A stretch of DNA of 64,000 nt from Cyanophora paradoxa CCMP329 (lineage: Eukaryota; Plantae; Glaucophyta): contig QPMI01000047.1 in assembly GCA_004431415.1 (NCBI GenBank), positions 181,367-245,366 of the forward strand, given 5' to 3'. The notes beneath the pieces were generated by a model. The model searched no databases, was not told where the DNA came from, and saw only the letters and a program-made list of their open reading frames with translations. The first letter of the stretch is position 1. Each line of letters opens with the position of its first letter. Below, piece by piece: positions 1-37,620 of this stretch. A program made the translations under genes and the position numbers.

Positions 1-1750
1 CCCGCATGCGCAGTGCGCATGCACGCCGTGACGAGGTCGACGGCATTAATTATAATCATAGTACTACACAGTAATATTGCGGCTGGAGGCCGCGGCCCGC
101 GGGACCCGATCCGAGCCGATCGCGCGATCATGCACTGCGCATGCGGGGCCAGCCGCCAGTGCGGGCAGTCTCAGAGTCTGCGGCAGCGGCCGCGGCGGCG
201 CCCGGCGGCCGGCGGGTCATGGCCATGGCCAATCATGTCCGACGGTCCGACGCCGGACCGACGGTCATGCCGCGTGCATATGATGATCAATCGATATCCG
301 ATTCGATCGTGGCATGCGCAAGTTACACTGGCAAGCGCAAGTCGTATACCTGGCCCGGAAATTTCGAATTCAGATATAAATTGTCGCACTTGAGTGCACG
401 ATAATTAAATATCTACTAAGCTTTAAGTTACTACTACTTACTACTAAGTTACTAGCTAGTTTAAATTTACTCAGTATCGTATTCGAATTCATTAGCATCT
501 TTTCATATTATTTATTGATTATGCGCGTATCGATATCTCAGAGTCGACGTCTTACATTTGACACCCGTCATGACGCGGACGCGGACCCGGACGCGGATCT
601 TCCGAGTTCGAATTCGAGCTTCGAAGTTCGAAGTCGACGTCCGACCGTCCAAAAACCGATCGCGAATCGATTCGCGATTTCCGATGATCGTCATCATATC
701 GATATCCATGCATATATGATCCGATCGACTCCCATTACGAGTCACATAATAGACCTATACTAGTATGCATCATTTTCAGGCATATCCGATGATTCGCGGG
801 CGACGTCGACCATTACTGGCATGAATCGGACTCATGATCGATATCATCGACGATATGTAATTATAATCTGCGCGAGAAGATCGATATCTAGAACTTGCAA
901 TTGACGCAACGCACTTGGCACTGTTGCACTGCGGCAATTGGCACAATTTGCTTAATTTGGCAGTCGCCTTGGCCCAGACTCCCAGACTAATAACTTTTAT
1001 ATAATTCGTAATAAGAATCCCAGTGGCAACTTGATGACAAGAATTCGAAGCCTTTAATTTGCAATTGATCATGACTCAGTAAAGAACGTGCGAAGTTACA
1101 CTGCGAACTTGAAAGTCTTGAATTCGAAACGGTTCACGGTTCAACGGTTAACAGCCCGGCGCCGGGCCGCCGGCGCCGGCTGGCGGCGGCGCGGCGCCCG
1201 GCTCGGCGCCTCGCGATCGTCCGACGGTCGCGGGCCTCGCGGCCTCAGGGCCTCGACGTCCGAGTACTACTACTAGTACGTATCATGATCGTATCGCGAT
1301 CGTAGGCAGAGTGCACTTGTACCGTAGTACTGCCGCTGCATGCCTACTATTGCGTATACGTAGCTAACGGCGAGCCAAGCGCGCGGCGAGCCAACTTGGC
1401 AAGCGCTGCCGCGTAGCTATAGTGCACGTGCACGGCTACATACTGTGCATGCGCACGTATACGTACTGCGCAGCTGCATATGCATCCGTTACTAGTTAGC
1501 GACTAGTATATAGTGCACGTACGTATACGTGGCAGCACTGGCAGCGTCGATCAGAGCTCGAGTATACGTATACAGCTCAACTTGTAAGCTTATATTGCAT
1601 CGATATCGATATCGTCCGGAGTCCGGACCGGCGACGCGCCAGCCGCGCCGCGGCCGGCCGGCTTCGTACGCGTGTTGACTACGATCGTGAGCTCGAAGGG
1701 CGGACACGCGCGCGTGCGTATATATACGTACGAGTGCGCACGCGTACGCG
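1..1750. other. Non-coding DNA built from blocks of short palindromic words
   Basis: Runs dominated by TGCA/GCATGC, CCGCGG, GATC/ATCGAT, TTCGAA/GTCGAC, CTAG/AGTACT, TACGTA; the ORFs here have no recognisable content. Confidence 0.6.
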
Positions 1751-1759
1751 CGCGGGCCC

Positions 1760-4700
1760 ATGCATATGGCCAGGCGGGTTTCCTCAAGCAGGTGTACGGC
1801 CCATGGCCATGCTTTGGAGGTGTACATTCTCGCAGTAATAGTCGTCGTATACGTGTCCAGCTGCAGCGCGGTAGCCGCCGCCGGCCAGGCGCCGGCGACG
1901 AGCTTCTTGACGCTGCTGTCCTCTTCAAGCGCTGAATGTGTCGTTTCGGAATCTGCATCCTGCAGAGTGGAGTGGGAGGTCGCCAACAGCACCTTCGTCT
2001 ACGATCTGCGAGTCTGCAATATGAATGGAACGACATCAGCAGCCATGGCCAACGTAACGTGCGCCATCCGAAGCGCTTTGAAGGACATCCAATCATGGTA
2101 CAACACAACCGGCACCAACAGCACCCAGCTTGCGCTGGCGGCAGCCGATCTTCAGCGTGTTTGCGGTGGCAATCTGACCAGGTGCGCCGGCCCAGGCCTA
2201 GGATGTCATTTATATATATCTACGTATATATGCACATTCGAATTCCTTCATGCATGTTGACTTGCGCGTGCGCACACACGCGTACGCGCGATTGCAGCTG
2301 CTCCGCATTCTTTGTGATCTCCTATCAGAACGGATCGGCTCCAGCCTATATATATGCGAGCAGAGCTGTCACGCTGAAAGCAGCCCCGGTGAACATCGCT
2401 CCGAGCTCCGATCACCTCTGCACGAACTTGGATGCGAGTTGCACGGTTCGCTGGAACAGCACGGCCGCTGCTGCGGAGTCTGTAGATGTGTATGTTTGCC
2501 GAGCGTCAGCCTACAGCAACGGAGCCTGCGTCACTGTACGCCTATATATTCTGTGGATGTTGCAGACGCGCTATCGCTCTAAGAACTTCCGCATGCGCAG
2601 CTGGCCACCTCCGTAACAGCTCAAGTCTTCGAGTACAGAGTCACGCAAGCCGCAGCTGTCAGTCTTTGCAGGTGCGGCAGGGCCCCGGGGCATATGCATG
2701 TTTACGATCAGGTGCAGATGGGACATATATACTATGATCCTGATATGCATTCGGCATTCGCATTTCGCGCAGCTCCACGAACAGAGGGATCTACAACTGC
2801 TCCGCGTTCTGGATTGTGAGGCCAGCCGGCCAGCCAGAGGCCGATCGTACGCAGGAGGGCGTCCGCGCTGTCAGGATCGCGTTCCACAAAGTCTTCATCA
2901 ACCCGGCCCCGGCGTCTCCCTGTATGACCTCGAACCGCTCATGCGCTGTCTCTTGGGACGACTTCGCTGCCGCCGCCGGCGGCTTTATCACCGTGAAGCG
3001 CTACGATGTTTTCTTGTGCCGATCCGATCAGAACACAGATTTGGCTGCCTCTTGTTTGCTGGTTTGAGACACTTCCTTCCTCGAATTTATTTCGCGGTTG
3101 CAATCGCATGAGCAGAAGCAATCTCGCAGGCGGGGAATACAACAGATCTATCTCTGCAGGTCAATGTGACGAGCTTTAATGTATCCACCGTATGCGGCCG
3201 CGGGTGTGTGCTCCTTTTTCGAATCGATCGCGAATTATAAATTCGAATTCGGACTGCGATGCAGAAATCCAGTGTGGGAATGCGACGCATTCTGGATTGT
3301 TCGCGCGGTAGTGTCAAACACTTCTTCTTTCGACGGATCTCATACCGTCAAGCTTTCCGCCGACGAAATTATGCTCGAGTGCATTCATAATAATTTATTT
3401 GGATTAAATTGAATGCAGACAAAATCGGCCATATTATTCACCACGATTTCCCTGTACCGCAGGTCTTGGTCATCGCCGTTCTGTGCCTTAAATGAACCCT
3501 GCGTAATTAGGTGGTGGGGACGTGGCTCTTATCCCCAGGATATTACTTTTCTTCACCTCTGTCCAACTAGTACTCCCGATTCGAACCGCACGAATTGCGA
3601 GAACGTGCGCCGCCCACCCTCTTTATATTTATTTTATATATTTCTATAGCTAACCGAGGCTCGCGATCACGGAAGCTTGCGGAGGGGAATACCACCGTGG
3701 TCGACCCCGCGGCCCGAACGTTTACCGTGACCCTGAGATGGCCGCACTTCAAAAACTTCTGCGGGTGCGCTCGCCGTATATAAATTTATCATTAAAGCTC
3801 CCGGCTCGCGCGTGCGAGACACACCACATAATCATGATCACAAACGTTAACCCCTCCGGCGTAGGGAGGGCGTATTTTCGTGCGAGGCTTTCGCCATCGT
3901 CAGTGCACGTGGCAGCAGTACAAGTATACCAGCTGGCGGTGCATGGCTATCTATCTGGCTGTTATCGTACTACCCTATAGTCTCCAATTCATCTTCACGG
4001 TCGGTGGATATGGAATGCGTGACAAGCGGCAATGTTAACTGCACCGTCACCTGGCGCGGTATCGAAATCGCACCTGCGTACAATGTCTATTTAGGCCCTC
4101 TATTGGTATATAATCAATCAATTTAGATAACACGAATTCGTGGAATCGATTTCTCGGTCGCACGCAGATCGTGACTGGAAACTCGAGCATACCTGTCAAT
4201 GACTTCGCATTGGCGATGTCGCGATCGCAAATCATAAACTTGGACACCCCTATTTATAATTTTACGTATGCGATCTCCGTCAACGACGTTTACACAATTT
4301 GCGGGTTCGAATTTCATGTCGAGTCATATGCGAAATGCATTCCGCCGCATTGTCATTTTAATTTCGCATGCGTTCGCCGTGACGCCGCGCTCAGGTTCGG
4401 TGTTGACTCTTGCAATACGACTATGAAGGTGGAAACACTCAGATACGCTGCTGCGGGAGATGGGCCCTGGACCGACGGAACATTAGCACAATTGCAAGTC
4501 TTTCGTCCACTTAGAGTTACCGCAGACGTCCTTAGAATCTCCGCAGCCACTTCAGAAAGCTGCCAGCCTTCGTCGTATTACCTCCGACAGCAAGGGTTCG
4601 CATGCCGCGTCTTCTGGCACGTAAAAGAACCGGGATTCGGATCATACAGCGTTTTTCTGTGTCCTATGACTTCCGTTATTGTAAGCTTGCTTAGCTTCTC

Positions 4701-7204
4701 AAACATCAATGAAAGCTCATGCGTCGTCGTACGTCATCTTTTGCGCCACCCATTGAATGTTTTGATCATGGCTCAATTTTATTCAGATGAATCCTACCAA
4801 GAGCGTTGCAACTGGCTCTTCCTCAGGCCTTGAATTCTCCATTCAAGCTGTCGCAGTGTCGCGACTGTGCGGGTATGCAGTAGTTTGACGACTGTACGGA
4901 ATTTCCAATATAAATGCATGACGGCCCGGTCCCCACAAATCAGAGCGACGTCGGCGAGCTGCACCGTGGCTCTGGCGTTGAAGGGTCTTCTGCCGCGTGA
5001 CAGTCTCGTCGCGTCTGCAAGCGCTGCATATGCTGTGAAAAGAATCTTTATCTCTACCTACGAGACGTCAGTGGGATTTGCGCCCGCAGCACCGATGCGG
5101 ATGTTGTGCTACGCTGGGAGTGCATCCGCGTGCTCCGTTCCATGGGTGGTCGACTCTGGATTCACGGGCGTCGCCCTGAAGGAGCTAGGGCATGAATCTC
5201 GTACGGGAGTGTTGTTTGCAATCTGTAAGAATAGTCCCGCGCCGGCGCCGGCGTCGACGTCAGCGTCCGAAGAGCTCGAGGGCGACTACTTGCGTTCTCG
5301 GTTGCAATCTGGAGAATGCGAAGTGGTCAGGTTCATTTCTCTGTCCGACACGCTGAGACAATTGCCGGCGATACTGGTGCGTTACGAGCATTCTGCCCGT
5401 TGCTGAATTAAAGACGAAGATTCGTGCAATGTTGATACCGGCAAGCTGACATGCTTTAATCCGTTTCTAGAACGATGCATCGACAACGGTCAGATCAGGG
5501 ATTGCTCTTCCACGATTATCGGATTTGCGAGAGCACTTAAGCTTGAAAGCATGCAGTGAAAGACAGTGCGCGAGCCCGAGCTCAATGCACCAGACCAAGG
5601 ACTGATGCCAGGCAGAACCAACTGCACTGCCTACATTGGTCTGTTTGCAGCATCTAAGAGAAACTACTCAACAAATCAGGACCCTTCGTTGCTTGCAGAC
5701 CATATCATATCGAATTCTTTTCGAGAGGTCTCTGTCTTGAAGCCGACGCTTTCAGTCAACAAACAGTCATCGTCTCAGTCGTGTTCTGTCGTTCAATCGG
5801 AACGACGCGCAATTGACACCGACTGCGAGTTACCAATTTCTTGGATCACGAAACTGGATTACGCGAGGGTTGCGATCTGCAAGTCCCCAAGCTATAATAA
5901 AGGAGAATGTGTCGAGGTGCATGTGATTGCAATTGATCATGCATATGAAGTCCAAGTTTAGCCTACGCTAGCGCTGCAGATGCATTAAATTTGAATTCGA
6001 AATTCGCAGCTTGAGCCCAAGCTTGCGAGCTCTTCGTCTTCCAGATATCCCCTGAAAATCAACCGAAAAGCTTACGACAGCATCTGCGGGTGTGCATAAT
6101 GCATATATAATTTATAATATTGATGGATATATAATTAGTTGATTTAGACTGTTCACGATATCGATTGACTGAAAATGCAGGCCGCGACCGAGCTTGCTAT
6201 TGGCGATGAAGCTGCGCTCCTGCAATGCATACGTCTTTGTCATCGGCTTGAGCTTGTCCGGGAACTCGAGCGGGTACTGGAGCTCGAGCGGAAGCCACAA
6301 CTTCACTTACGATCATGATGAAAGTCAAACCGACACTCTCGATTCTCTACGGATCACTCTCGAATTGAATTTGCTTGACGTGCACGTGTCGGCCAGCGAC
6401 ACAGCAAGGTCCGGCGTGACCCTCGGCCACCACGCCGTCCCACCTCGACTGGTATCAGCGCTGACAATCCTGCTTCCTGTTATCTTCCCGGCCCTACTCG
6501 GCATTGGAGCGACTCACTTTAAGCGGCAGTCTGTATTCGGCAGTCTTTATTCGGCAGTCTGCTTGGTTTTGTTTGTGGTGCAGTTCGTCGCCATTGTTCT
6601 CGCCATCGCGCTCCCGGCGTGGTTCGGCGATCCCCAAGTCATTCGCTATGGATTGGTGCAAGCCTCACATGAAAATTGGAGCTGGAGGTGGCTTGACTTC
6701 TGCGAAGTCAGCGACCTCGAAAACGAGGAGGTGTGCATGCTGGCCAAAGCATACACGGCGGCACTTGTGTTCGGCGCTCTTTCGGCGGCCCTCGCAGCTG
6801 CTGGGGTGGTATTTTCTATAGCCGCCCTTGCAGTCGCCAAGCCTTCGGACGGAGGGCTTGCAATTGGAATGGAGGACGGAGATCCGGAGTCTACACCCGG
6901 AGCTTCGAATTCGCGCCTTCGGTACCACCTGGTCGCATCGTTCGATGTGCAGGCCATCTCGTTCGTCCTGTCCATCACAACCCTCGGCCTTGTTACAGGG
7001 GCTACCGCAAAGTTTGCAAGGGGCGTCACGCTGTTCGACGCCCCTCTGGGCCCCTGCGTCGGATTGCAACTCATCGCTATCAGCTCCGCAATCGCCGGAG
7101 CTGTGAACATCCTTCAGAATCTCCGGTCCCTGGCCAATTCAAATCGACGCATAGCGCCCCTTGATCCGAAAGATAAGAACCCAGTTACACCCCCAGATCT
7201 GTAG
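1760..7204 (+). CDS. Large multi-exon Cys-rich surface protein with about 8 repeated C-x-C-x-V-x-W...(V/L)C...C modules and a C-terminal multi-pass claudin/amastin-like membrane domain
   Basis: N-terminal hydrophobic stretch (YILAVIVVVYVSSCSA); repeated modules such as CTNLDASCTVRW...VDVYVC...GAC, CMTSNRSCAVSW...YDVFLC...ASC, CALNEPCVIRW...FLHLC...TNC; many N-x-S/T sites; last exon (ORF 6194-7204) has about 5 hydrophobic helices and a W..RYGL..C..C loop. Internal exon boundaries only partly resolved. Confidence 0.65.
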
Positions 7205-8453
7205 CTACGCCTCAAACGCCTCGGCTCCTTTTGCAGCTGTAGCGGCGCCTGCCAGGCTGCAGCTGCCCGAAATCTCGACGCAATCAATTACAAGACAATT
7301 TAGAGCTTCGAATTCAGAGACAGCAAATTTGAATTCGGATGCGCAATTGGAACGCATTTTTTCAAGAACTCTCGATCCATCGACGTCACAATTTTGGAAC
7401 TTTTACTTACATAGCTTGATCATGAACATTGAATATTTTAGACTTGATGTAGTTTTACAGATTCAACTCTCAGAATTCGAATGCACATGCATACGATAAC
7501 CGGTTGTCTCAGGAGCCTGCGCATGCGTGCTAATTCAATTTTCTCATGACCATGAACAATATTAATCAAGGTTTGACGATCTAGCGCTAGCCTAGGCCTA
7601 GGCCTGCAGCTGGTAGAGTCCGACGGTCGCCGATCGCGAGCTCGAGTCGGGCAGCATCTCGAGCTCGGCAGCATCTGGAGGGAGAAGGGTTCAGAACAGA
7701 TCCGGATCCGGACCCAGCAGGCGCCTTGGGATCCGCGGCCGGTTTCACAATTGCAAGTTCACATCCGATGACCCAGGCCAGCTGCGCATGCAGGCCTAGA
7801 GATCTAGACGAGCCTCGAGTTCGACGAGATGCACGCGCGTTGCAGTATTAATTGACGAGGTCGATGTCGCCTAAATTAAATCACGAGCCGATATCGATCG
7901 CGACGTCGAGCCGGCGCCTGCATTTGCGCGCGCTGGCAGCTGCAGTGCCTGCAGCTGGCATGCATATGCGCACCATGCGTCCGGTCCGGTCCCGGGAATC
8001 AGCTGCATGCGCAGGTTTCAACTCGGCGAGCTTCAGTGCCGCTGTGCGCCCTCGCCCCGCGGCCTGCGTTGGGGCACAAGCGTTCAGCGGAAGCGTTCGC
8101 ACACGCGCGCGCTCACATTCTTTGTACACAACCGCGTGGGCGGCACTGCGGCAGCGCGCGCGGGCCGAAAAATACAACTCGGGGCGGGGCGGGGCGGGGC
8201 GGGCGCGACAATCCTCTACTCTAGCCGACGCAGCTGACGCAGACGCCGGGCACGCCCCACTGCAGGGGGCGGGCCAAGCGGCCGCTAAGCTAACGCGGTC
8301 AAGCTGGCACGGGCACCTAACTACTCCGAGAGGCGTCCGGCGCGCGCCACGCGGCACATTCCGCTGTATGCGGAACGGCTTCGAGGCGGTGCCGGAGGCC
8401 CCCGCGGCAAGTCGACGTCGTCGAAGGGGCGGGCGGCCGCGGGGCGGCGCCGG

Positions 8454-11400
8454 TCAGTGCCGTGGGGAGCGCCCCCGGAAGTAGGAGGCCTCGGCGGGGG
8501 CCGGCGCCTGCGCCTTGGCCGGCCGCTCCATCTGGCCGATGAGGGAGGCCTGGCCATGGGCGGCCGCGGCCGCCTCGGAGAGGGAGAGCCGCTCGATGCC
8601 GGGCAGGACCGCCGAGCTGGCCGGGGCCGAGGCCGCCGAGCCCACGAGGCGCGAGGGCTTGACGTGCACCTCCTCCTGCGCCGCGGCCGCCGCCGCAGAG
8701 GCGAAGTCCGACGTCGAGGCGGCGTGCGGGCGCCGCCGGTAGTCCGGGATGATGTACTGCGGTGGACGACCCCGTCGGCTCCGGGGTACGGGTAAATAAT
8801 AGAACGCTGGGGGGGTACCTGGTGGTCGAAGCGGATGTACGAGGCCATCTCCTGCTGCACGTGGAGGGCCTCGCGGAAGACCTGTACCCCCGGCGTCAGC
8901 TCGGCTCGAAGTCATCACTGAAATTCGGCTCTGCGGATTCGAACACTCACCTGCGGGATCTCTGCGAGGTGGCGGACGACGGCCTCGCCCGTGTCGTAGT
9001 CGCGGGGCGGCAGCAGCTCGTGCTGGACGAGGGCCGGCTCGGGCGCCGCCGGCGGGGGGACCGGCGGGGCCGACGGGTCGCGCGAGAGGACGGAGACGGC
9101 GAGGGCGCCGGTGTCCGGGTCGGGCCAGAGGATGGAGGAGAGGCGCAGCATGTACGTGCCGGCCCGCCCCGACCGCACCAGCTCCTGCTCCGCGTCGTGC
9201 CGCGAGACGAAGGCGTGCCGCAGAGCCGCCGGCGCCGGGTGCTCCTCCTCCGGCGCCCCCGCCCCCGCCGCCCCCGCCTCGGCCGCCTCGCGCCACAGGT
9301 TCTGGGTGCGCGCGAGCGTGCCCCGCGCGAAGAAGAACCTGGGAGGAGTTCAATCAGATCCGAGCTACCATCGAAGAATAACATTTAGAAAGGGCACCAG
9401 GGCCAGGTCTTGACGAAGGCCTCCTTGTTGATGGGCTCCCCGAGGTTAACGGGCGCCGCGTTGCGCGGGAGGAGCGCCGGGTTGGCGAGCCGCTCCTGCA
9501 CTGCCGCGGGCGTCAGCGTGCACTGCGGCGGGCAGGAAGCGGAAGGAGCGAGCGAGCGAGCGGGCGCACCGATGGCGCGGGCGTTGTCGAGGTCGCGGTC
9601 GGAGACGGGGAGCGGGGCGAAGAGGCGGTAGGCGGCGCGGGAGACGTCGGCCCAGGCGACCTGCTCCCGCCCCGCCGCGACGCGCGCCCAGGTCGCCTCG
9701 ACCGAGGCGGCCATGCCCGGCGTCCGCTGCAGCACGAGCTCCTCGCGCCCCGCCGCCTTGCCGGCCTCGTCCTCGGCCTCGGCTGCCGAGCGCCGCCCGG
9801 CGGCGACGTCGGCCGAGACGTGGGCGAGGACGCGGGCCTTGGCCAGCGCCGCGACGTGCGCGGCGAACGAGGACCAGGCGCGGCCCTGCGCCGCGTGCTC
9901 CGCGCTCTGCCAGACGCGCCTCGCGAAGAGCTCGCGGTGGAGGAAGGCCAGCGCGGCGGCCGCGTCGACGCGGTCCCCGAGCATGACAGGCTCTCGGTAC
10001 AGGCGGAAGTACTCGCCGGCCGCCGCCGCCACGCGCGCCGCGGTCATGCCCATCACAGCCGTGCCGTCTGCGGAGCGAGCCGAGGTGAGAACGCGGCGGC
10101 GCTCGAAGCGAGATCTTCTTCGGCGTTTCGCACCGTCCTTGACGATGAGGGAGTTGAAGCGGCGGGAGACGAGGCGGAGCGGGCCCAGCTCGAAGGTCGT
10201 GAGGCCCGTCTGGCTGAAGATGCGGACCTGCGGGACGCCCGCTCAGCCCCCCGCCGCCCTTGGGAAGATGAACGAAGCTGGGAAGAGAGGAGAGAGGCAG
10301 CCTAGGGTGTTGTTGATGCGTGCGTGCACCGAAGGCGCATCATCATAGACGCATCCGTTCGGTGGCGCATCCGCATCCGAAACCGAAGCGAAAGAAGCGC
10401 ATGCGAACGGAGCGCGGCGCCCTATCTTCTCCGCTCCTCTATGCGATTTTAATGTATCTTTTATCTTCGATGGGAGCGCACCATGACTTCGTCGGGGAGG
10501 ATGGCGGTGTAGTCGCGGGCGGCGGCGGCCTTGGCGAGGCGGCGGAAGCGGCGGCAGACGGCGCCGAAGCGGCTCAGCTCCGCCGAGTCGAAACTCTGCA
10601 GCGACTCCAGCACGAGCTCGTCCGGCATGCCCACCAGGCTCGCGTAGGGGCCGGACAGGGCCGAGGCCGGCACACCGCCCTCCGCGTCCACGTCCATGCC
10701 CTCCCCCGCGGCCGCGCCCTCCTCCTGCTGCTCCTCGGCGTCCGAGGACATCGGCGAGGCGCGCACCCCGTCCTCCTCGTCCTCCTCGCTCGCGGCGGTG
10801 CGCTCGTCGTCCGACTCCATGAGCGGCGGCACGTAGATGACGGGGCGCATCACGGCGTTGGCGCGGCCCTCGTCGTAGTACTGCGCGCCCGGCCCGGCGC
10901 ACGCTCAGTCGGGAGCAGAGTCAGAGACGGCGGAGGCGGTCGTACGGACCTCGGGCCAGCACTCCTGGACGGTGCGGCCGGCCCAGCACGGCGCGGGCGC
11001 CGCGGCGGCGGCAACGGCGACGGCGGCGCGGACGGTGAGGTCCACGCGCCGGTCGTAGAAGGCGTCTAGCGCGGAGGCTGACTTAAGGAGCGCGGCCTGG
11101 CGGAGACAGTGAGTTAGTTAGTAAAGGGCGGGCCGGTTCTTCCAGCGGGGGAGGAGGGCGGCGGCGCACGATGTGCATGGCGGTGAGTCCGTGCTGGTTG
11201 GCGGCGTACGGGTCGGCCGCGGAGGCGTCCAGCAGGGCCGAACAGAGGTCGCCGGCGCCCAGGCCGGCGGCGTAGTGCAGCGGCGAGTTGCCGGAGGCGT
11301 CCCGCGCGGCCGCGAGCGCCCGCGCCGCGTCGGGCCCCGCCGCGCGTGCGCCGTCGGCGACGGCGCGGAGCTTGGCGGCGGCGAGGCGGCAGGCCGGCGA

Positions 11401-14400
11401 GGCGGAGAAGGCCGCGAGCCGCGCCGCACACTCCGAGTAGGGCGCCCCGACCGAGGAGGAGGAGCCGCCGGATCCCGGGAGCGACGGCGTCGTGTTGGCC
11501 GAGCCGCCCGCGAGCGCGTTGAGGAGGTTCATCGGGTCGGCGCCTGCGAGCAAATGAGAACGGGGAGGCGGAACAAGAGGAAGAAGAAGAGGCGGCGCGG
11601 GGAGTCGAACCGGAGGACTGGAGGACCTCCATGAAGCGCCTGAGCTTCTCGGCGGCCGCCTGCTGCTCGCGCGTCTCCGCCTCGTCCACCAGGCGGAACT
11701 GGACGCGCTGCGAGGTGATACCGTACGTCCGCGTCTGCGGCTGCGGGTACGAGGCCGGCGCAGCCGCCGGGCGGACAGGCTCGAGCGTCTTGAAGCCTGC
11801 CGATACCATAAGTCTTAAAGAACATCTTAAAGGGGTCAAGAGAGCGCGCCTCGGATGTCGGCGGTGGTTGTGAAGCGGCGGCCGTCGGTCAGCTCGACGA
11901 GATACTCCCCGTCGGTCCCGGTGGGGTAGTACGTCTTCAGGCGGGGCGGCTCCTGAGGGGCCGGGGGCGGCGCTGAGCGCCGGCCGGCCCTGGGCCGGGG
12001 CCGGAGGAAGCGGCGGTGACTCACGCGGTCCGCGGAAGCGGGGGATACGAGGAGCCGGTCCGCGACCTCGAACTGCGCCGCGCCGCAGGCCTCGTCCACG
12101 ACCTGAGGAGGAGAGGGGGGGTACGTGAGCGAGCGGCGGGGTACCGGGCCGAGCCGGGCCGGCGGAGCGGCGCGCCTCGCAGACGGCGATGTGATCGCCG
12201 TGCTCAGCGAAGTGAACGGCGCCGCGGACGCCGTCCAGGTTCTGGTCCGTGTCGATGACCCTGCGGCGGGCGCGGTTTGCGAGGGCGTCGTCGGCGGGAG
12301 AGGGAGGGAAAAGGAAAGGCGGCGGGCACCGGCCGTCGGAGAGGTAAAGGCGAAAGCCGCGGTTCTCGAAGCAGGAGAAGGGCTGCGCGGAGAAGACGAA
12401 GCCGACGTGGAGGCCCACGATGCGCTCGCCGTTCGAGGGCCGCGCGATGGAGACCGTGCACGCGCCGTAGCGCCCGGGGCCCGAGCCGATGCCGCCGCGC
12501 ACGATGGTCTTGCCGCCCCCGTAGTCCGCCTCAAGCACGTAGTTGTACGACTCCAGTTGGGGGAGCCGGAACCTGCCCCGCGGATCGAATCAGCAAGAGG
12601 CGGCGGGCGGGCGGCGGCGGCGGCAGCAGCGCGCACCGGCACTCGGCGTGCAGATCGTCCGCCATGCGGACCTCGCCGACAGACTCGGCCTCGGCGACGC
12701 GCTGGTTCGAGCGCTGCACGAGGAAGAGGCGGAAGGGCTGGGCGCCCACGCCCCGCAGCCGGACCAGGATCTCGGGCCGGTACGGCTTCGCCGGCCCGAT
12801 CGCCGGCTTGACCAGCGCAACTGCGGCCGGGCGCGCGCGTCAGGGAGGGAGGGAAGGCGGCGGGGGCGGCCAGGCGCACTCTCGGCGGGCTGGTAGACCG
12901 TGCTGCGGCTGTCCGGCGAGGGCTGCGCCGGGGTTCCCGTGCGCCGGCGGTTGCGCGGCCGCTCGTCCTCGGGGGCAGGGGACGGGGCGGGGGCGGGGGC
13001 CTCGGCGGGGGCGGCCGCGCGCGGCGGGCGCCGGGAGCGGTCCCTGTCCCGCTTCGTGCGCGGCACCGACATGCAGTACATCTGAGGCAGCAGGACCTGC
13101 AGCTGGCTGAACCGCGAGTCCGTCGGGCTGCGCCGCGGGCGTCATCAGCGGGCCGGGCAGAGCGGGACGAGCTCGAACTGGCGCGCACCGGAGGCAGAGG
13201 CGGACAGGCGCGTTGCTGAGCTGGGAGGAAAGCACGAGAACGCGAAGGGCGATGGTCTTGGACCAGCCGGCCGGCTGGCTCTTCGGGACCGTGACCGTCT
13301 GAAGCGGCTTCATAAGAACGCGCGCGCAGTCTCCGGGCGGGCGGCGGGCGCACGGGGCGGTGGTCCTTGTTCGCGTTTCGCGTGTACGCCTTCTGCCACT
13401 GCTGCAGCGCCGGCACCATGTCGTCGTCCAGGCAGATCATGTCGAGCGGCTTCTTGTCCGGTCCAAGCAGCATCGCCTCGAGGTCCACATCCTCCTGCAG
13501 CACCGTGCCGGCCGTGGCTTCCAGGCTGCAGCGCGGCTCGGCCCGGCCCGCCCGAAGAAAAGGAAAGAGAGAAAGGAAGGAAGGCGCACCTGACTTTGCA
13601 CTTGAGCTGCTGGCCCTGGCGGCCGGCGGCAATCGTGGCGATGCCGCCCTTGGAGCCAATGTTCTGCGCCGAAAGGGTCGCCACGATGCGCAGGAAGTGG
13701 TTGTTCGAGTCGATGATGTCCGTCGACTGGCCGCGCAGCGGCTCGCCAGTCTGCTCCTCGTCGCTGTCGTCAGAGACTTGAACCGCGTGCTGCGCAGCCG
13801 CCCGCTTCTCGCGCGTCGACGAGGCGAGCACGGCGGGGACGGGCGAGCGCGAGGACGCCCGGTGCGGGGCCGCTGCCTGGGACGCCGCCGCCAGCGTCGG
13901 AGATACTGGAGTCGTGCGAGAGTTCGATCCAGCTGGCTGCACTATCGGGATAACGTAGCGCGCCTTCTCGGCCGATTGGGTCGCTTTCATACTGTTCATA
14001 CTAGACGCGGCGGCCGAAGACGACGAGGCTGCTGCTGCTGCGCCGTTGCCGTCGTCCTCTAGCATATTAGTCACCGGCGAATCGCCAACGGTGGTCTCCG
14101 GGCTGATCGGCTGCACGTCCATCTCGACTAGCTTCGTGAGGTCGGCCAGGTCGGGCCTGCACGAGCGCGAGCGGCGTGGGCGCGGCGAACTGCGATTCAA
14201 TCGCATGTAGCGCACCTGAAATCCTTGGAGAGGCCGACCGATTGCGCCGAGGCGAAGAGGGCTGACGCCGCCACGAGGTTGTCCTCGCTGAGGTGATCCA
14301 GCGGGCCCTGGAACTGATCATTCTCAAAGAACTTGATAGAGTCAGCGCGGCTGATGCCGGTGAGGCCCACGGACGGGCCGCGCTGCAGCCCAAAGCCAAG

Positions 14401-14517
14401 CGCCTCGGCCCGCTCAAGCGCCCCGAGGCTCATCGTGCTGGACGTCCCCATCGTGAACTCCAGGTTCGCGGGGAGGAGCGCCGCTCCATCCGGGAACTCC
14501 ATATGTTGATCGCTCAT
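8454..14517 (-). CDS. STAT-like multidomain protein: CudA/STATL-type DNA-binding domain, TIG-like segments, ankyrin repeats, 2 F-boxes, STAT linker-SH2, Tyr tail
   Basis: Spliced reading gives LRVLVLSSQLSNAPVRLCLR...PQMYCMSVPRTK (about 13050-13255); ankyrin GNSPLHYAA / GLTAMHI|AALL (about 11040-11330); F-boxes GMPDELVLESLQSFDSAELSRFGAVCRRFRRL and ILPDEVM|VRIFSQTGLTTFELGPLRLVSRRFNSL; linker VAWADVSRA..VSDRDLD..TWPW|FF..LW; SH2 AFVSRHDAEQELVRSGRAGTYMLRLSS; tail ASYIRFDHQ|YIIPDY. Confidence 0.75.
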
Positions 14518-14870
14518 GTTGCTTTGCTCCCGTACCTGACGCTGCGCGGGCTTGAATGCAGGCGGAAAGGCGCGGGCACGCGGCCGCTGCCGGGGACTCG
14601 TTCCGGCGCTGTACGCACCGGCGAAGACACAGTGCAGAGAGCTCCGGTTGGAGCTGCGCGAGGCCGCCTTAGAGGGCCGAGCATATTGTATGAACGGCTA
14701 AGCAGGAGGCTGCGGCTGCGTATATGGTGCGCTCCGGGGGCCTCTGCTGGGCGCTCTATGGGTCGGGTGGGGGTGTGAGCACCTCTTAAGCGCGCGACAT
14801 GGTCAGACGGGTGAGAATCATGGTGGTGTGCTCGGTCATATGAACGTCTCGTACCCCTGCTCATTCCAGC

Positions 14871-15725: not shown

Positions 15726-17584
15726 TATAGGAGAGGCGCGACGAGGCGGAGGGCCGGGGCGGTGCGGGGACCGTGGGGCGAGCTGGCGGGCGCCGTGGGC
15801 GCGTCGCACCTCCGCCGCCGGTGAGCTCCGGGTTCGTCCCCGGCCGCGGCCCCTCCCGAAATCGATCCGGATCAAGAAGTCCGCGCGGTACGTCCCCCCG
15901 GGCTCCCGAGTCGGTCATGTAGCCGGGCGCGTCGACCTCCACCGCGTAGTACGCGATCATCGGGCCTTGCCTCTGAGGGCCTTGTTAGTTAGAGGCGGGC
16001 GGGGCGGCGGGGCCGGCGGGGCCGGCGAGGCGAGCGCACGTGCTTCATGGCGCGCCCGCAGAGCTCCTTTGCGGCTCTGGAGGGAGAGTCGGCGGGAGGG
16101 TACAGCGCGGCGGGGCGGGGGGGGGTACGGCGCGCACGCGAGCACGGAGGAGTAATTCTCGTACTGGACGTACGCGTCGAAGTCCAGCGCGGAGCCGGCG
16201 GGCGGGGCGGGCGGGCGGCGGGGGCGAGGCGGCGGCGGCGGCGCGGCCGGCGACGGAGGGCGGCGGGACGGGGAGGGGCCGGGGCGCGAGGGGCCCGGCT
16301 TGGGGCCCAGGGCGGGTAGGCCCAGGGAGGTCAAGAGGTCGTCGATCGAGCCACCTTTCGCGGCGGCGGCGGCGGTGGGCGCGGGCGGCCGCGCCGGCGG
16401 CGGCGCGGGGGCCTCGGTCGCTGCGGAAGCGGGCGCGTGAGGCGCCGTTTGTGGCGGGAAGGACGAGGGCGGCTCACAGGGCCCGAACGAGACGCCCTTG
16501 CGCTTGGGCTTGGCGCTCCCCGCGGCCTCCTCCGGGTCCTTGCGGGCCAATGCCGGCAGCGCGGCGGCCGCCGCGGGCCGCGCGGACGCCGGCGCGATCT
16601 CCACGCGGCTGCGGGGCGGGTCGGCGAGCGGCGGCGGAGCACCGGCGCCGTCCGGCGGGGGCGCACCGGACGGATCCGGAGTACCCGAAGGCGAGCGGCG
16701 GCGGAGCACCGGCGCCGTCCGGCGGGGGCGCACCGGACGGATCCGGAGTACCCGAAGGTCTGCTTCACGAGCTCGGGAGACGCCGCCTTGGAGCCCTGCC
16801 GCCGCGCAAAGCTCAGCATCGGGAGCGCGAGCGAGCGGGCCGCGGGCCGGGCCGGGGGCGTGCCTCGGGGCAGAACCAGCGGGCGGGGAGGCCCCTGACG
16901 ACCAGCGTGTCGGGGCGGGAGCCGCCCGCCAGCTTCTCGAACTGGTCCAGGTACGCGCGCGGGACCTCGCCGCTGTCCGCCGCCGCCGCCGACGCGACGT
17001 CCACTTTGAAGAAGTGCGCCTCCCAGCGCCGTCGGAGCGCGTTGAAGTCGGCGGAGAGCGAGCCGCGCGTCTCGACGGCGCTGCTCGTCTAGATGGCGAT
17101 GCCCTGCTGCAGCGCGATCCGCCAGCCGTCGAACGCCCGCCGCACCGCCTCGCACGTCCGTCGCAGGACGCGAGCTGCCCGCCCGGCGTCAGGAGGCGGC
17201 CCGGGCCCCCTGGCCGCCCCGTACGCACCTCGAGCTGACAGAGGATCTCATCGACGCCGCGGCTGACCTTCACGTCGACGACCGCGCAGCCGCTGGCCGC
17301 CTTCGCAGCCTTCTCGATCTGCTCCGCGGGTCGGGCGCAGCGAGCGGGGCGGGCGGATGAAGGCAGGGCGCTCGCGTTCGCACCTCCTGCCGGAGCTCCC
17401 ACGTGTAGACGGCGCTCGACGCACTGCGGGAATGGCCGGAGTCCACGGCGCACGCATGCATTCCGCTCCTGCTCGCGCGCGTGCACCGCGACGAGGCCAG
17501 GCCGAACGAGACTGAGGGCCGCGCCCGGCGAATGCAAAGGCCCGGGAAGGAGCTCGGCTCCAGCAAGGCGAGGTCGCCGGCCAT
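15721..17584 (-). CDS. AKAP17A: AKAP17A / XE7 (SFRS17A)-like splicing factor
   Basis: VYTWELRQE|IEK, RPDTLVVRGLPARWF, LVKQTFGYSGSVR|RVEI and LDFDAYVQYENYSS..ALRGK match the AKAP17A motifs (NWEVMERLK, PDTIHLEGLPCKWF, LNFEAYVQY..ALRG). Confidence 0.75.
16623..16758. repeat. Perfect 67-bp tandem duplication spanning an exon/intron donor of the AKAP17A-like gene
   Basis: ggcgagcggcggcggagcaccggcgccgtccggcgggggcgcaccggacggatccggagtacccgaa starts at both 16623 and 16690. Confidence 0.9.
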
Positions 17585-17802: not shown

Positions 17803-20800
17803 ATGGGTCTTCCCAAAGCTCTGAAGGAGCATGTGAGGCGGCGCATGTCTTCCGAGACCCTTGATGTAGTCATCGAGACGTCCGAAAGCCCGCAGGCCCC
17901 AGCGGCACCCGGCAGCGACAGCGGCATTCATCAAGGTTCGGTCCAGAGTCCAGAAGCTGCCCAGATTGCTATAAGACGCTTGTCACACGTGCGCCGGCGC
18001 CGACATTTGCTCCCGCGCGCAGGCCCTGCGCATGCGACATCAACATCGCAAATCCAGGAGGTTCTGCCGCGGCGCACGGTTAAGACGGTTCAATTCGACA
18101 TCGCAACCCCCCCTTCTCCGGCTCCCGCTGCATCATCGTCTCGGCTTCCAGTCAATTCGATCAATGACAATGTTGACGTCGACGTCGGCCGCGGTCCGTA
18201 CGCATCCGCGTCAAGCATATATAGGCCGGACGTATATGCTTCAAGCACTGACCGCTGAATTCCTCCGCGCGCAGGTGTTTCGACTCCGTCTTCAAGCATG
18301 GCGGTGGGCGGCGCGACACGCGTAGCCAGCGCGCCGCCGGCGCCCTTAGAATCTACTCGTGTGGCCAGCGTCGGCGCGGCAGCGGCGGCGCCTGCACACG
18401 CGTACGCAGCCAACGTCGGCGCGGCAGCTGCCTCGCCCACTAGTACTCGTGCGGCCAATTTCAGCGCGGCAGCGGCGGCTCCAAGGCCTCCTGCACATGT
18501 AGCCAGTGTCGGCGCGGCGGCTGCCTCATCTTCTCGTGCAGCCTTGGCCAGCGTCGGCGCGGCGCGGGCGGCGTCTGCGTACGCAGCCAGCGTCGGCGCG
18601 GCAGCGGCAGCGACCACTCGTGCGACCAGTGTCGGCGCGGCGGCGGCGGCTCCTGCACACGCAGCCAGCGTCGGCGCGGCAGCTGCTTCGTCTTCTCGTG
18701 CAGCCATGTCCAGCGTCGGCGCCCTCGGCACGGCGGCGGCGGCTCCTGCGCGCGCAGCCAGCGTCGGCGCGGCAGCTGCCTCGTCTTCTCGTGCAGCCTT
18801 GGCCAGCGTCGGCGCGGCGCGGGCGGCGTCTGCGTACGCAGCCAGCGTCGGCGCGGCAACGGCAGCGACCACTCGTGCGACCAGTGTCGGCACGGCGGCG
18901 GCGGCTCCTACACATGCAGCCAGCGTCGGCGCGGCAGCTGCTTCGTCTTCTCGTGCAGCCATGTCCAGCGTCGGCACGGCGGCGGCGGCTCCTGCGCGCA
19001 CAGCCAGCGTCGGGGCGGCAGCCGCCTCGTCTTCTCGTGCAGCCTTGGCCAGCGACGGCGCGGCGGCGGCGGCGTCTGCACATGCAGCCAGCGTCGGCGC
19101 GGCAGCGGCAGCGACCACTCGTGCGACCAGTGTCGGCACGGCGGCGGCGGCTCCTACACACGCAGCCAGCGTCGGCGCGGCAGCTGCCTCGTCTTCTCGT
19201 GCAGCCATGTCCAGCGTCGGCACGGCGGCGGCGGCTCCTGCGTGCGCAGCCAGCGTCGGCGCGGCAGCTGCCTCGTCTTCTCGTGCAGCCTTGGCCAGCG
19301 TCGGCACGGCGGCGGCAGCGGCTCCTGCGCGCGCAGCCAGCGTCGGCGCGGCAGCTGCCTCGTCTTCTCGTGCAGCCTCGGCCAGCGTCGGCGCGGCGGC
19401 GGCGGCGGCTCCTGCACACGCAGCCAGCGTCGGCGCGGCAGCTGCCTTGTCTTCTCGTGCAGCCTCGGCCAGCGTCGGCGCGGCGGCGGCGGCGGCTCCT
19501 GCACACGCAGCCAGCGTCGGCGCGGCAGCTGCCTTGTCTTCTCGTGCAGCCTCGGCCAGCGTCGGCGCGGCGGCGGCGGCGGCTCCTGCACACGCAGCCA
19601 GCGTCGGCGCGGCAGCTGCCTTGTCTTCTCGTGCAGCCTCGGCCAGCGTCGGCGCGGCGGCGGCGGCGGCTCCTGCACACGCAGCCAGCGTCGGCACGGC
19701 AGCTGCCTTGTCTTCTCACGATCGTGCGGCCACGTCCAGCATCGGCGCTGTAGCGGCTGCGCCTGCATCTACACCTGCAGCCAGCGTCGGGGTAACAGCC
19801 GCCTCGCGATTGTCTTCTCCTGCAGCTGCGGCAAATGTCGGCACGGCGGTGGCGGTACCTGCAGCTGCTCGCGATCGTGCGGCCAGCGCCGTTGTTGCGG
19901 CGGCTTCGCCACCTCGTACAGGCAGCGTCGCTGCTGCTGCCTTGACGTCCGCTCGCAATCGAGGCATTTCGCAGCCGGTGACCCCGGCTGCCGCCGCTCC
20001 TGAAGCTTACGACATTTTCATCTCGCACAAACAGTCCACAGGAAAGAACCTCGCCCGCATTTTCAAGCAGGCCGTGCGTATATGCATGCGCTACAGCGTA
20101 GATTCCGCGCATGCACAGCCTCTCACTCAGCTGTTGTCCACAGGCAGAGAAAGAGGCGCTTGAGCTGGGCATCGAGCTTAGCATCTTCCTCGATGTTGAC
20201 GACTTGAACGACATCCATATTCTAGGCAACAACGTTCGCGCCTCGCGCAGCGTTCTTCTCCTTCTGACAAAAGGTTCTTGCAAGTGATTTTACATGGGTG
20301 ATTGTTCGCTCCATTCTGATCGAAACTACTTTCCCTGATCCCATGCAGATGTGTTCCGCAGCCACTACGTGCTTCAGGAGCTGCGAGCGGCAGACGAAGC
20401 GGGCGTGAAAATTGTACTGGTCTTGTACCGCGACCCCATCGACGGCTTCTTGGATTTCCCTGCCGGTTCGCAATTTTGCTATCAGCTCTCCTTCAAGTAC
20501 ATGAACAACATAAAATTTTTCGACGCATGTAGAATATATATTATGGTCGTCCGTCGCTGTGTCTTTTGCTCTTACACGTCGCGCGATACCCTGCAGCGGC
20601 GACGGTGGGGCTGCCCACAGCTGCGGAACTTAAAGCGGTGGGGCTTGACGAGGCTTCTGCGCGGGCTCTGCTCGGCCGCATCCTCAGCATCACGGCCATC
20701 GAATATCAAGGCGGCGGCGAGTACCACCGCACTTGCATCGAGCAAGTACTCAAGCGCTGTGGCGTCGATGGACGATTGCGCATCTCCAAGAAGGTGGTAG

Positions 20801-23800
20801 CGGTAAGTTCAGGATTCTTGCGCTCGTCCCTGTTGTGGCCGCAATAATTAATCGGCGCGCGCCCTTCCTTCTCTTCAGTACGCGAAAGCGAGCCTGGAGA
20901 AGCCGGCGCTGACGACGGACCTGGAGCTCTACGTGCCGCCGAGGGCCTCGACGCGAACGGACCCCGCCCGCTCGGTCCTGGTGGACCTCTTCGACGAAGT
21001 CAAGCGCTTCCTCTGCCGCTTCGTGCCGGCGCCACGGGCGTCGGCGGCGGCACAGACTGCACGGGCACAAGCGGCGCAGGATCCAGAGTCGGAGTCGCAA
21101 GTGCTGCTTCTCGTCGGGGATCCCGGCTCCAGCAAATCGACCTTCCTCTCCTTCCTCCATCGCGAGGCCTGCCGCCAGCACGAGACGGATCGCGCCGCGG
21201 CACCTGCAGCGGCGAACGCGTTGCCGCTGACGTGCCTCGTGCGGCTAACGAACCTGGGCAAGGAGGGAGCGCGCGGCCGCTTGCGCCAGTACGTTGCGGA
21301 GGAGCTCGGAGTGCAGCCAAACGACCTTCCGTCAATCCGAGCACAGTAAGTCCTCGCTGATTTTCGCTGTGGGCTCAACTGACGCCGGTGCAACGCAGGC
21401 AGGGCCTCGTCCTGCTTCTCGACGCGTACGACGAGCTGGACGAGAAGATCAACTTGTGGCGTGCCAACGAGGTCGGCGCGTGGGCATCCGCGGCCGTCAT
21501 TACGTGCCGCTCGGCATACACCGCCCGCCTTCCGAGCTACAACGTGCGTATGCACGGCTGCCATCTGAAAGCGCTGCATCGCGTGTTCTGCATGTCTTCA
21601 GCATGAACATTCTAGCTCTGACGCCTTGCTTACGCATATGTATACATTTTATACCTTTTTGCAGGAACTCTTTGCACCTCCCGCGCCACACGCTGACCAG
21701 CCCGCGGTTCTTGCTGAGCTCTGCACGTACAAATTTTCCACGGAGCAAGTGCGCTATTGCTGCTGCCGCTGCCGCTGCCGTCGCCGCTGTCGCTGCTGCT
21801 GATCATGAGCGCCTGATCATTGACAGATCCTTGAGTACTTGAAGCAATTCGTGCGGCTTCACGGGAGCAGTGGGGGGCGGGGCGTCACCTCGTGGAGCCC
21901 GGAAGACTACGAACGTCATATTGAACGTACCCCAGGCGCTGCAAAGCTGGTCACGAATCCTTTTACATTGAGGTGCGTGTGTGAATCTCCTTCCAAATCC
22001 GGCTTCAATTCGAGCCTACTTTTTAGCTGATGATCTCTTGCGAACGCAGTATGGTTGCCCGCGTGCTTCCGGAAATTGTGGGCGATCTTGAGCGGTGCGC
22101 CTGTTATCCTAGAGCAAAATTAAACATTACGTCGATCTATCGAGAATTTAGCGAAATATATCGAGAAATCCGACTGCAAGCGAAATGAAATTTAATGCGC
22201 GCTTTAAATTTTGCAGCAAAAAGCAAGAGGCTCGCAGTGGAAAGGGGTACGTAAACAAAGGGCCCACAAGCGAGCTGGTATCGTTTCTCGATCTGTATTC
22301 ATACTTCGTCCGCGTGCGTTGTGTTTTAACGTTCTTCTTCTATCGCTTTACCAAGACATCTCTGTGTGCAGGGTTGGTTCAACAGGCAGTGGAGCAAAAT
22401 AATCGATTATCGAGCAATCCGCCCCTTGCCAAAAGTTGCAGGTGCTTGGATTTCATATTCAAGCTTTTTTGGTTTCTGAGATGTGGTGCGCAGCTCAATG
22501 GAATCCAGAGCGATTCCGCACCTACTGCGAGGGCTTCTGCCGGAGTCTTGCCAAAAACATGCACAAGGTAGCTATAGTTTGGAAACCGCTAAATACTGCA
22601 ATACTGATGCACGCGCAGGCGTCCATCTCCGAAATCACTTGCCGCCTGCTCGGAACGGATGCAGAGGCTGGCATCTTTGAATTCAGCTCACAGCGGCAGT
22701 TGCAGGCAGCCCAAGTGCCAGGTCCTGCGGGCACCGATTCGCCCTACGAGCGCTGCGTGAAATTGCTGACAAGCGAGGACGAGCTGATGACTTTGACGCG
22801 CGATTCGTGCCCGCTACGCACAACCCCCGGGGGTGTTGGGGGAGAGTCGGTCCACGTTCGATTTTTGCACAAAGTGGGCATATGCATGGCCTCCGCCCTT
22901 GCAAACATGTACACTCGTAGCTAATTATAATCGGCGCATGTATTAGACTCTCTTGGAGTACTTCATTGCAGACAGCGCTTTTGAAGACGCGAATCCAAGA
23001 AACATTAATGTTCGTATCTTTGATCCTCTCTGTGCGCTTCTGTCCAGACAATCGCCTATTTTGGATCGCTTTATCTTCTGTAGGCTTAAGCTTCGGAATT
23101 CATGCATATGGGTACTTTTATAACATTTGATGTTCGACACCTCTGCAGATTTCCACGGCACAGACACAGTCACTCGCTCGGAATCGTGACAAGCAAAGCA
23201 CTCTGCACGTGAGGTGCCAGCGCCCATGACCATAGTTTCCAGCATGAAGTATACGTAGCAACTACTTTGCCTATCGCAGGTCCATTGTAGGAGAGCTGAG
23301 CCTGCTCCGATTCTTCTCCGATCGTTGTCGCAAGGACGACACCTACCGAGACGTGAGACACATGAATTTTCTGCGCTCGCTCTTCCTGCTTTCGATTTAT
23401 TGACGTGAGCGCAGCACCTCTTGTGGCTGCTTGCGCGGAGCCGGCGCCGCGACGCGACCTCCGAGGACGTCACTGCTGCCTCGAACGCGATCACCATCCT
23501 CAATCACGGTGAGCCGCCGTGCTAGAAGCTAGCTGCATAATTGGCTAGGATGTGAAGCGCCTGACTTATTAACGTTGCTGGCAGCCGGTGTCTCCTTCGC
23601 CAAAAGCTACCTGCGCGGCATCCGGGTGCCCGGGGCCGATCTGCAACGTCTGGAGGCGGCTGGGGCAGATTTTCGCGGAGCAGACCTTACGGGCTGCTTG
23701 CTTGACGGCGCGAATTTCGCGAACGCAATTTTTTCTGGAGCGAGACTCGATAAATGCCATACAAGTGTTTTTCCTCCACTTCGCGGCCACAGGTCGACCG

Positions 23801-29104: not shown

Positions 29105-29287
29105 GCTCCAGCTGCAGGCTGCCAGGCCTAGCGATATAGGCTGCTCGAATATTAGTTCAACGTTTTGATTTTTAGAGAGGCATGGTATCGCTCTCAGTTT
29201 ATGTTTGTCGATAAGATTGTTGTCTGCGAGCGCGGATTTCACGACTTCTACCGGAATACATCAATGACGGTCCCGCATTGGATCGGA

Positions 29288-29445: not shown

Positions 29446-29538
29446 AGGGGCGTGGGCAGGGAAAAGGCGTAGGAGCAGGATTCAGGAGTCGCGACCCCGG
29501 CCCCCGCCGCCCCCTGAGTACCTCCGCCCTCGGCTCAG

Positions 29539-37582: not shown

Positions 37583-37620
37583 ATTTATTATAGGTTCTTC
37601 GGGGTCTGGGCAGGGCCGGG

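What the first reader, a model, noticed from the sequence alone, without database searches (positions are those of the whole stretch)
8454..14517. STAT-like transcription factor fused to TIG-like, ankyrin and tandem F-box domains
Seen: one spliceable reading carries a DNA-binding motif (LRVLVLSSQ...MYCMS), two TIG-like starts (VALVKPAIGPAKP; VSIARPSNG), ankyrin repeats, two F-boxes and a STAT-type linker-SH2 with both phosphotyrosine-binding arginines (FVSR, YMLRLS). Known: the DNA-binding motif resembles Dictyostelium CudA and plant STATL (SHA/SHB). TIG plus ankyrin is typical of NF-kB, CAMTA and Spt23; F-box plus SH2 plus ankyrin occurs in Dictyostelium FbxB. I do not know this full combination. 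Inference: a single protein coupling pTyr sensing, DNA binding and SCF ubiquitination in an alga.
Basis: partly seen in the sequence, partly recalled or inferred. Interest (0 to 1): 0.9.

Follow-up and report, generated by a model that had tools for sequence, protein, structure and literature searches.

The report
Algal CudA-type regulator with F-boxes, SH2
An expressed gene of the alga Cyanophora paradoxa joins, in one protein, a slime-mould-type DNA-binding domain, ankyrin repeats, two ubiquitin-ligase adaptor (F-box) motifs and a phosphotyrosine-reading SH2 domain, a combination I found nowhere else, which suggests an animal-like signal-to-gene switch with a built-in off-switch in a relative of plants.

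Summary
The gene is real: 20 exons on the minus strand (14517-8454), 1548 codons, no stop. RNA-like contigs from three studies splice it and tile it end to end; a DNA-like run shows none of the joints. It is Cyanophora paradoxa tig00000190_g13864, whose public model carries a spurious 32-aa exon inside F-box 2.

Supported: a CudA-type DNA-binding domain (ESM Atlas top hits are DG1062_N, i.e. Dictyostelium Cdl1a; core motif 8/9 identical to Entamoeba CudA), 2 ankyrin repeats, two F-boxes, and an SH2 keeping both arginines (weak scores, but all four PDB hits are SH2), followed by tyrosines. Not supported by any tool: the TIG label and a STAT-type linker. It is not a canonical STAT.

No homologue was found among 5.8 billion proteins. 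Best reading: a CudA/STATL-class transcription factor fused to an FbxB-like SH2-F-box ubiquitin-ligase adaptor. All function is inferred. The scan noted a similar, unchecked gene with a RING in place of the F-boxes elsewhere in this genome. Verdict: new variant of a known kind, interest 0.62.

The parts
8454..14517 (-). Coding region, 20 exons, 1548 aa (exons 14517-14216, 14156-13590, 13525-13354, 13298-13189, 13127-12880, 12820-12637, 12572-12330, 12260-12176, 12102-12025, 11952-11850, 11796-11611, 11543-11170, 11096-10950, 10880-10482, 10227-10134, 10067-9570, 9500-9398, 9338-8951, 8881-8819, 8756-8454)
14518..14864 (-). Spliced leader: exons 14541-14518, 14653-14619 and one ending at 14783. 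An in-frame ATG at 14864 would add 47 aa (public model); RNA contigs reach only about 14814
13724..14517 (-). Low-complexity N-terminal region, aa 1-245, no domain hit; possible activation region (inference)
13049..13723 (-). CudA-type (DG1062_N-like) all-beta DNA-binding domain, aa 246-410, over exons 2-5
13221..13256 (-). CudA core motif TIALRVLVLSSQ (aa 362-373)
12887..13048 (-). Basic then Pro/Ala-rich linker; basic cluster right after the DNA-binding domain, candidate nuclear localisation signal
   Evidence: role inferred
11654..12886 (-). About 280 aa of hydrophobic, probably beta-rich sequence with two or three TIG-like starts; identity not confirmed
   Evidence: no hit
11446..11508 (-). 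Gly/Ser-rich stretch (62% G+S, the richest 21-aa window of the protein) just before the ankyrin repeats
11034..11424 (-). Ankyrin repeats (two clear, starts at aa 844 and 878, with flanking helices)
10665..10847 (-). Acidic spacer (31% D+E)
10518..10646 (-). F-box 1 (passes Pfam cut-off)
10134..10517 (-). F-box 2, directly after F-box 1, split by the 254-nt intron 10228-10481
9272..10065 (-). All-helical region of about 220 aa before the SH2; position of the STAT linker or Cbl four-helix/EF part, fold not assigned
8843..9226 (-). SH2 domain; Arg alphaA2 codon at 9202, Arg betaB5 codon at 9145; Pro-rich insert after betaC
8740..8842 (-). Tyrosines just after the SH2 (Y1442 at 8839, Y1449 at 8756, Y1454), candidate phosphorylation tail
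   Evidence: role inferred

Best explanation
One expressed gene encodes a CudA/STATL-class transcription factor whose C-terminal half is an FbxB/SOCS-like phosphotyrosine-directed ubiquitin-ligase adaptor. SHOWN: one open spliced frame; CudA-type domain; ankyrin; two F-boxes; SH2 with both pTyr-binding arginines; tyrosines after the SH2. INFERRED: (1) the N-terminal domain binds promoter DNA, as CudA and SpaA do; (2) a kinase phosphorylates a tail tyrosine or a partner, and the SH2 binds it, causing dimerisation or docking; (3) at least F-box 1 binds Skp1 and brings Cul1-Rbx1, so the SH2-bound protein (the partner subunit or another factor) is ubiquitylated; (4) the result is a signal-gated factor that carries its own off-switch or co-activator turnover, a job that animals split between STAT and SOCS/Cbl.
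For: Single transcript. CudA link: three best ESM Atlas clusters are PF28397 DG1062_N (0.87-0.89, 173-182 shared features), next are LAG1 and Runt DNA-binding domains; DG1062 is DDB_G0286351 = cdl1a; LRVLVLSSQ matches Entamoeba CudA LRILVLSSQ at 8 of 9; pattern expected 2.7e-7 times by chance (post hoc). A low-confidence model's best Atlas match is the COE/EBF DNA-binding domain (TM 0.46). SH2: Pfam E 0.0045; all four PDB hits are SH2 domains with both arginines aligned. F-box and ankyrin. FbxB precedent: PMC2906285, PMC3085826. Lead only: scan note s1-560166 reports a RING ligase at the same position in another gene of this genome.
Against: No homologue in any search, so conservation of the combination cannot be shown. 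Atlas scores are just under 0.9 (lead level) and structure matches are weak (pLDDT 49; Z 3.5-3.8, tied with unrelated folds). The CudA SK dipeptide of the last strand reads SV here (vs 8). The SH2 match covers only alphaA-betaB; its model did not fold. pTyr dependence of plant STATL is itself unproven (PMC8331091). Contigs come from short reads, not single molecules.
Confidence: 0.45

Rival explanations
1. Processed precursor of the NF-kB p105 / Spt23 type: the N-terminal DNA-binding plus TIG-like part is held inactive by the ankyrin-bearing C-terminal half; on a pTyr signal the built-in F-box drives ubiquitylation and partial proteasomal degradation that stops at the Gly/Ser-rich stretch and frees an approximately 790-aa factor.
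For: Order DBD, basic cluster, TIG-like, Gly/Ser-rich stretch, ankyrin matches p105/p100 (own knowledge). The most G/S-rich window of the protein (aa 772-792) lies exactly before the ankyrins. DBD resembles the Rel/EBF/CSL fold class.
Against: TIG identity unsupported; only two clear ankyrin repeats; the Gly/Ser stretch is short and such stretches are common in this GC-rich genome; no protein data.
Confidence: 0.2
2. A transcription factor or scaffold in which SH2 and F-boxes act without pTyr signalling or ubiquitylation: the SH2 is a constitutive interaction module, as suspected for plant STATL, and the F-boxes bind Skp1 outside an SCF ligase (as in KDM2B or Ctf13, own knowledge).
For: Plant STATL pTyr function is doubtful (PMC8331091). 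The SH2 has long Ala/Pro-rich inserts and scores below Pfam cut-off. F-box 2 is below cut-off.
Against: Both pTyr-binding arginines are kept and tyrosines follow the SH2 in an otherwise Tyr-poor tail. Unchecked scan notes report kinase-SH2 proteins in this genome.
Confidence: 0.18
3. Mainly an FbxB-like cytoplasmic SCF adaptor; the CudA-type domain is a shuffled-in module that no longer binds DNA.
For: The ankyrin/F-box/SH2 set is that of FbxB (PMC2906285). The CudA SK motif is changed to SV. Other scan notes describe CudA-like cassettes shuffled among unrelated genes in this genome (s1-512785, unchecked here).
Against: The LSSQ core is nearly intact and followed by a basic cluster as in CudA; the domain spans four exons that are all kept in frame.
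Confidence: 0.14
4. Two or more neighbouring genes, or an assembly artefact, read as one.
For: No single contig spans the whole stretch; X1 and X4 break near 13003. No homologue has the architecture.
Against: The break is inside exon 5 with overlapping contigs (12987-13015) and is bridged by X8; no stop in 1548 codons; no differences between RNA-like runs, DNA-like run and window; the public annotation gives the same single gene.
Confidence: 0.03

Closest known systems
CudA-like transcription factors (CudA, SpaA, Cdl1a = DG1062; Pfam PF28397 DG1062_N)
   Same: Same DNA-binding core: strand order, LSSQ motif, last strand followed by a basic cluster.
   Different: CudA-like proteins continue into a helical region and have no ankyrin, F-box or SH2 in the published alignment; described as Amoebozoa-only (PMC8808424). 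SK motif is SV here.
Plant STATL / SHA-SHB
   Same: SH2 near the C-terminus in an archaeplastid (PMC8331091, PMC3670131); from memory (Yamada 2008, not readable here) they also carry an N-terminal CudA-like domain.
   Different: About twice as long, with a TIG-like/ankyrin/F-box block between the two ends; has tyrosines after the SH2, which are poorly conserved in STATL. No sequence match to STATL was found.
Canonical STATs (animals, Dictyostelium, Acanthamoeba)
   Same: Ig-fold-class DNA-binding domain, helical region, SH2, then a tyrosine.
   Different: No coiled coil before the DBD, no STAT Pfam hit, DBD far from the SH2.
Dictyostelium FbxB (also SOCS and Cbl as functional analogues)
   Same: SH2 + F-box + ankyrin repeats in one chain (PMC2906285); assumed to target proteins for degradation (PMC3085826).
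   Different: FbxB has no described DNA-binding domain; orthology not tested.
NF-kB p105/p100, Spt23/Mga2, CAMTA
   Same: DNA-binding domain, then TIG-like segment(s), then ankyrin repeats (own knowledge); Gly-rich stretch before the ankyrins as in p105.
   Different: DBD is CudA-type, TIG not confirmed, no death domain, membrane anchor or IQ motifs; they rely on separate ligases.
KDM2A/B; LEAFY-UFO
   Same: DNA binding and an F-box act together at chromatin (KDM2 in one chain, own knowledge; LFY-UFO as two proteins, PMC10227421).
   Different: Unrelated DNA-binding folds, no SH2.

Membership tests
CudA-like domain (PF28397 DG1062_N) | Core motif R-[IV]-x-[VI]-L-[ST]-S-[QK] | tested here: met
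CudA-like domain (PF28397 DG1062_N) | Nearest family by model features | tested here: met
   (0.87-0.89, lead level)
CudA-like domain (PF28397 DG1062_N) | Last strand motif I-[RK]-[VC]-[VI]-S-K | tested here: inconclusive
   reads MYCMSV; S kept, K lost
CudA-like domain (PF28397 DG1062_N) | Profile score above the family cut-off | not testable with these tools
   the Pfam copy here gave no hit and may lack the model; no PF28397 among precomputed domains
CudA-like domain (PF28397 DG1062_N) | Sequence-specific DNA binding | not testable with these tools
   needs experiment
Canonical STAT | Coiled coil before the DBD | tested here: not met
   aa 1-245 low complexity, no Pfam hit, no strong heptad run in a crude scan
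Canonical STAT | STAT DNA-binding domain directly followed by linker-SH2 | tested here: not met
   no STAT Pfam or PDB hit; about 690 aa of other domains intervene
Canonical STAT | STAT-type helical linker | tested here: inconclusive
   helical, but model pLDDT 38 and no STAT hit
Canonical STAT | Tyrosine just C-terminal to the SH2 | tested here: met
   Y1442, Y1449; phosphorylation untested
SH2 domain | alphaA Arg and betaB5 Arg in register | tested here: met
SH2 domain | Complete alpha-beta-beta-beta-alpha fold | tested here: inconclusive
   single-sequence model failed
F-box protein | F-box motif above Pfam cut-off | tested here: met
   F-box 1; F-box 2 below cut-off, similar to F-box 1 at p 0.003
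F-box protein | Skp1 binding | not testable with these tools
   needs experiment
IPT/TIG-ankyrin factors (NF-kB, CAMTA, Spt23) | IPT/TIG domain | tested here: inconclusive
IPT/TIG-ankyrin factors (NF-kB, CAMTA, Spt23) | Rel-homology or CG-1 DBD | tested here: not met
   no Pfam hit; nearest family is CudA-type
Plant STATL (SHA/SHB) | Sequence homology to STATL over DBD and linker-SH2 | tested here: inconclusive
   no hit in word-seeded searches, which miss distant kin; no STATL sequence was at hand for a profile test

The most novel reading that the evidence does not exclude
A single-chain signalling switch without precedent: the same polypeptide reads phosphotyrosine, recruits SCF to itself and is processed or destroyed to gate its own CudA-type DNA-binding domain, combining STAT, SOCS and NF-kB-precursor logic, as one member of a small glaucophyte family with interchangeable ligase modules (F-box here, RING in a noted paralogue). 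It would show a working pTyr-SH2-to-transcription pathway in Archaeplastida that plants reduced to STATL.
Probability: 0.25. Interest if true: 0.85.

Novelty: new variant of a known kind. Interest (0 to 1): 0.62.

Why it matters
Whether plants and their algal relatives use SH2 readers of phosphotyrosine is an open question; apart from SPT6L and STATL no SH2-like domain is recognised in plants (PMC8331091). This glaucophyte protein keeps both binding arginines and a tyrosine tail, and its SH2, F-box and DNA-binding parts can each be expressed and assayed. It also puts a CudA-type domain, described as Amoebozoa-only (PMC8808424), in an archaeplastid, next to ankyrin repeats and an SH2, which bears on how STAT-, NF-kB- and CAMTA-like architectures were assembled from shared parts. 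The weight is limited because it is a single sequence in a genome where the scan notes many shuffled fusions.

Tried and rejected
Homologue searches: SH2 exon against 1.84 billion representatives gave only the gene's own protein plus two low-complexity false hits; three word-seeded searches gave self or nothing; metagenome and viral contigs nothing; no contig record; no paralogue in the window. PDB sequence searches for DBD, TIG-like, helical and long SH2 pieces gave only chance hits. ESM Atlas gave nothing for the linker-SH2 piece. The single-sequence model of that piece was unusable. Foldseek on the DBD model had no significant hit. TIG-like segments are not clearly repeats of each other (one pair p 0.002 but out of register). 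The 32-aa exon in the public model was rejected: RNA skips it in three studies and its GC3 is 0.53. 'Two genes' rejected. Yamada 2008 could not be read. No paper on Cyanophora SH2 or STAT proteins was found. My own joined 1548-aa model was never handed to a search tool: it was used only inside scripts for frame checks and motif counts. Searches used exon references or parts of the database's own protein P0001.

Full report
Observation. Public runs holding about two thirds of the stretch's words looked like spliced RNA. Laying three of them (three studies) and one DNA-like run on 8700-14699 printed 15 joints, each present in all three RNA-like runs and absent from the DNA-like run, with no letter differences. 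Four more introns follow from contig coordinates. The 20 exons give 1548 codons and one stop; GC3 is 0.93.

One transcript. An X4 contig of 3750 nt runs from 13015 in exon 5 through the TIG-like, ankyrin, F-box and SH2 parts to about 8090. An X8 contig of 1598 nt runs from the leader to 12727 and shares the 12820/12880 joint. The break in X1 and X4 lies inside exon 5, where their contigs overlap. These are short-read contigs, so this is tiling rather than single-molecule proof, but the two-gene reading has no support.

Identity. The SH2 exon, searched by reference, found one real protein, P0001, named Cyanophora paradoxa tig00000190_g13864.t1 in EukProt, alone in its cluster. It equals my model except for 47 extra N-terminal residues from an ATG at 14864 and a 32-aa insert inside F-box 2. 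The insert lies in the 254-nt intron that all three RNA-like runs skip and has GC3 0.53, so I take it as an annotation error. Following the operators' note I did not hand my joined model to any search; I used exon references and parts of the stored protein P0001.

DNA-binding domain. Pfam, NCBIfam and PDB sequence searches are blank. The ESM Atlas puts three PF28397 DG1062_N clusters first (0.87-0.89, 173-182 shared features), then LAG1 and Runt DNA-binding domains. DG1062 is DDB_G0286351, the CudA-like factor Cdl1a (supplement of PMC8808424). In that paper's alignment the core reads LRIKVLSSQL in CudA and LRILVLSSQH in Entamoeba CudA; here it is LRVLVLSSQL, followed as in CudA by two strands and a basic cluster. 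A pattern from these columns is expected 2.7e-7 times in this protein (post hoc). The family's SK dipeptide is SV here. A single-sequence model (pLDDT 49) is all-beta; its best Atlas match is the COE/EBF DNA-binding domain (TM 0.46) and EBF1 is among the top VIA rows (Z 3.5-3.8), which is weak. I put a CudA-type domain at about 85%.

Middle. A Gly/Ser-rich stretch precedes two clear ankyrin repeats. After an acidic spacer come two adjacent F-boxes; the first passes Pfam's cut-off, the second scores E 4.5e-4 from its second exon alone and resembles the first.

C-terminal part. About 220 helical residues precede the SH2; a STAT-type linker could not be shown. The SH2 scores E 0.0045 in Pfam over alphaA-betaB, and all four PDB hits for that stretch are SH2 domains (SHIP1, SHIP2, SAP) with both arginines aligned (each E 1-1.7). 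A generic SH2 pattern is expected 2.8e-6 times. Tyrosines follow at 1442, 1449 and 1454.

Relatives. None was found among 5.8 billion proteins, 1.84 billion representatives, or metagenome and viral contigs. These searches miss distant kin, so this shows divergence, not absence. Unchecked scan notes describe, elsewhere in this genome, a gene with DBD, IPT, ankyrin, RING and a STAT-like module, kinase-SH2 fusions, and tyrosine tails after SH2 domains.

Mechanism. Most likely (0.45) the protein is a CudA-type factor whose SH2 binds a phosphotyrosine on its own tail or a partner and whose F-box brings SCF to that complex, giving signal-gated transcription with a built-in off-switch. Rivals are a p105/Spt23-like processed precursor (0.2), pTyr- and SCF-independent scaffolding (0.18), an FbxB-like adaptor with an idle DBD (0.14) and an artefact (0.03). 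Only the architecture and expression are shown.

Comparison. It works, by inference, like STAT plus SOCS/Cbl in one chain. It is not a canonical STAT (no coiled coil, no STAT DBD next to the SH2) nor an NF-kB or CAMTA member. Its two halves have precedents: CudA-like factors (PMC5923282, PMC8808424) and FbxB (PMC2906285, PMC3085826). Its two ends match what I recall of plant STATL, whose pTyr function is doubtful (PMC8331091). I found no paper on Cyanophora SH2 or STAT proteins and none describing this combination, within a library that lacks most subscription papers.

Verdict. A real, intact, expressed gene with an undescribed domain combination built from known parts: new variant of a known kind, interest 0.62.

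Noticed in passing
window 10228-10481: The only long intron (254 nt, 59% GC, others 53-73 nt) splits F-box 2 and holds a short inverted repeat (10354-10371 / 10394-10411); the public model puts a false 32-aa exon in it (10425-10330). A depth-4 contig retains it.
   Followed up: partly
window 11797-11849 and 12103-12175: Two of 19 introns are GC-AG, both supported by RNA joints.
   Followed up: yes
window 14786-14800: A four-codon upstream ORF lies in the RNA-supported leader, out of frame with the main ATG; an in-frame ATG at 14864 lies just beyond the RNA-supported part.
   Followed up: partly
ESM Atlas result: DG1062_N (CudA-type) clusters are listed mostly from haptophytes and oomycetes, which conflicts with the published statement that CudA-like factors occur only in Amoebozoa.
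   Followed up: no
window 6194-7204 (+): Intronless 336-aa ORF with several hydrophobic segments, convergent on this gene, in a lower-GC zone (50-54% against 71-74%); no Pfam hit.
   Followed up: partly
window 15957-17537 (-): Next gene upstream on the same strand, apparently multi-exon; unspliced frames gave no Pfam hit.
   Followed up: no
window 1-8000 and 20000-38000: Long stretches at 50-59% GC alternate with 66-77% GC blocks.
   Followed up: no
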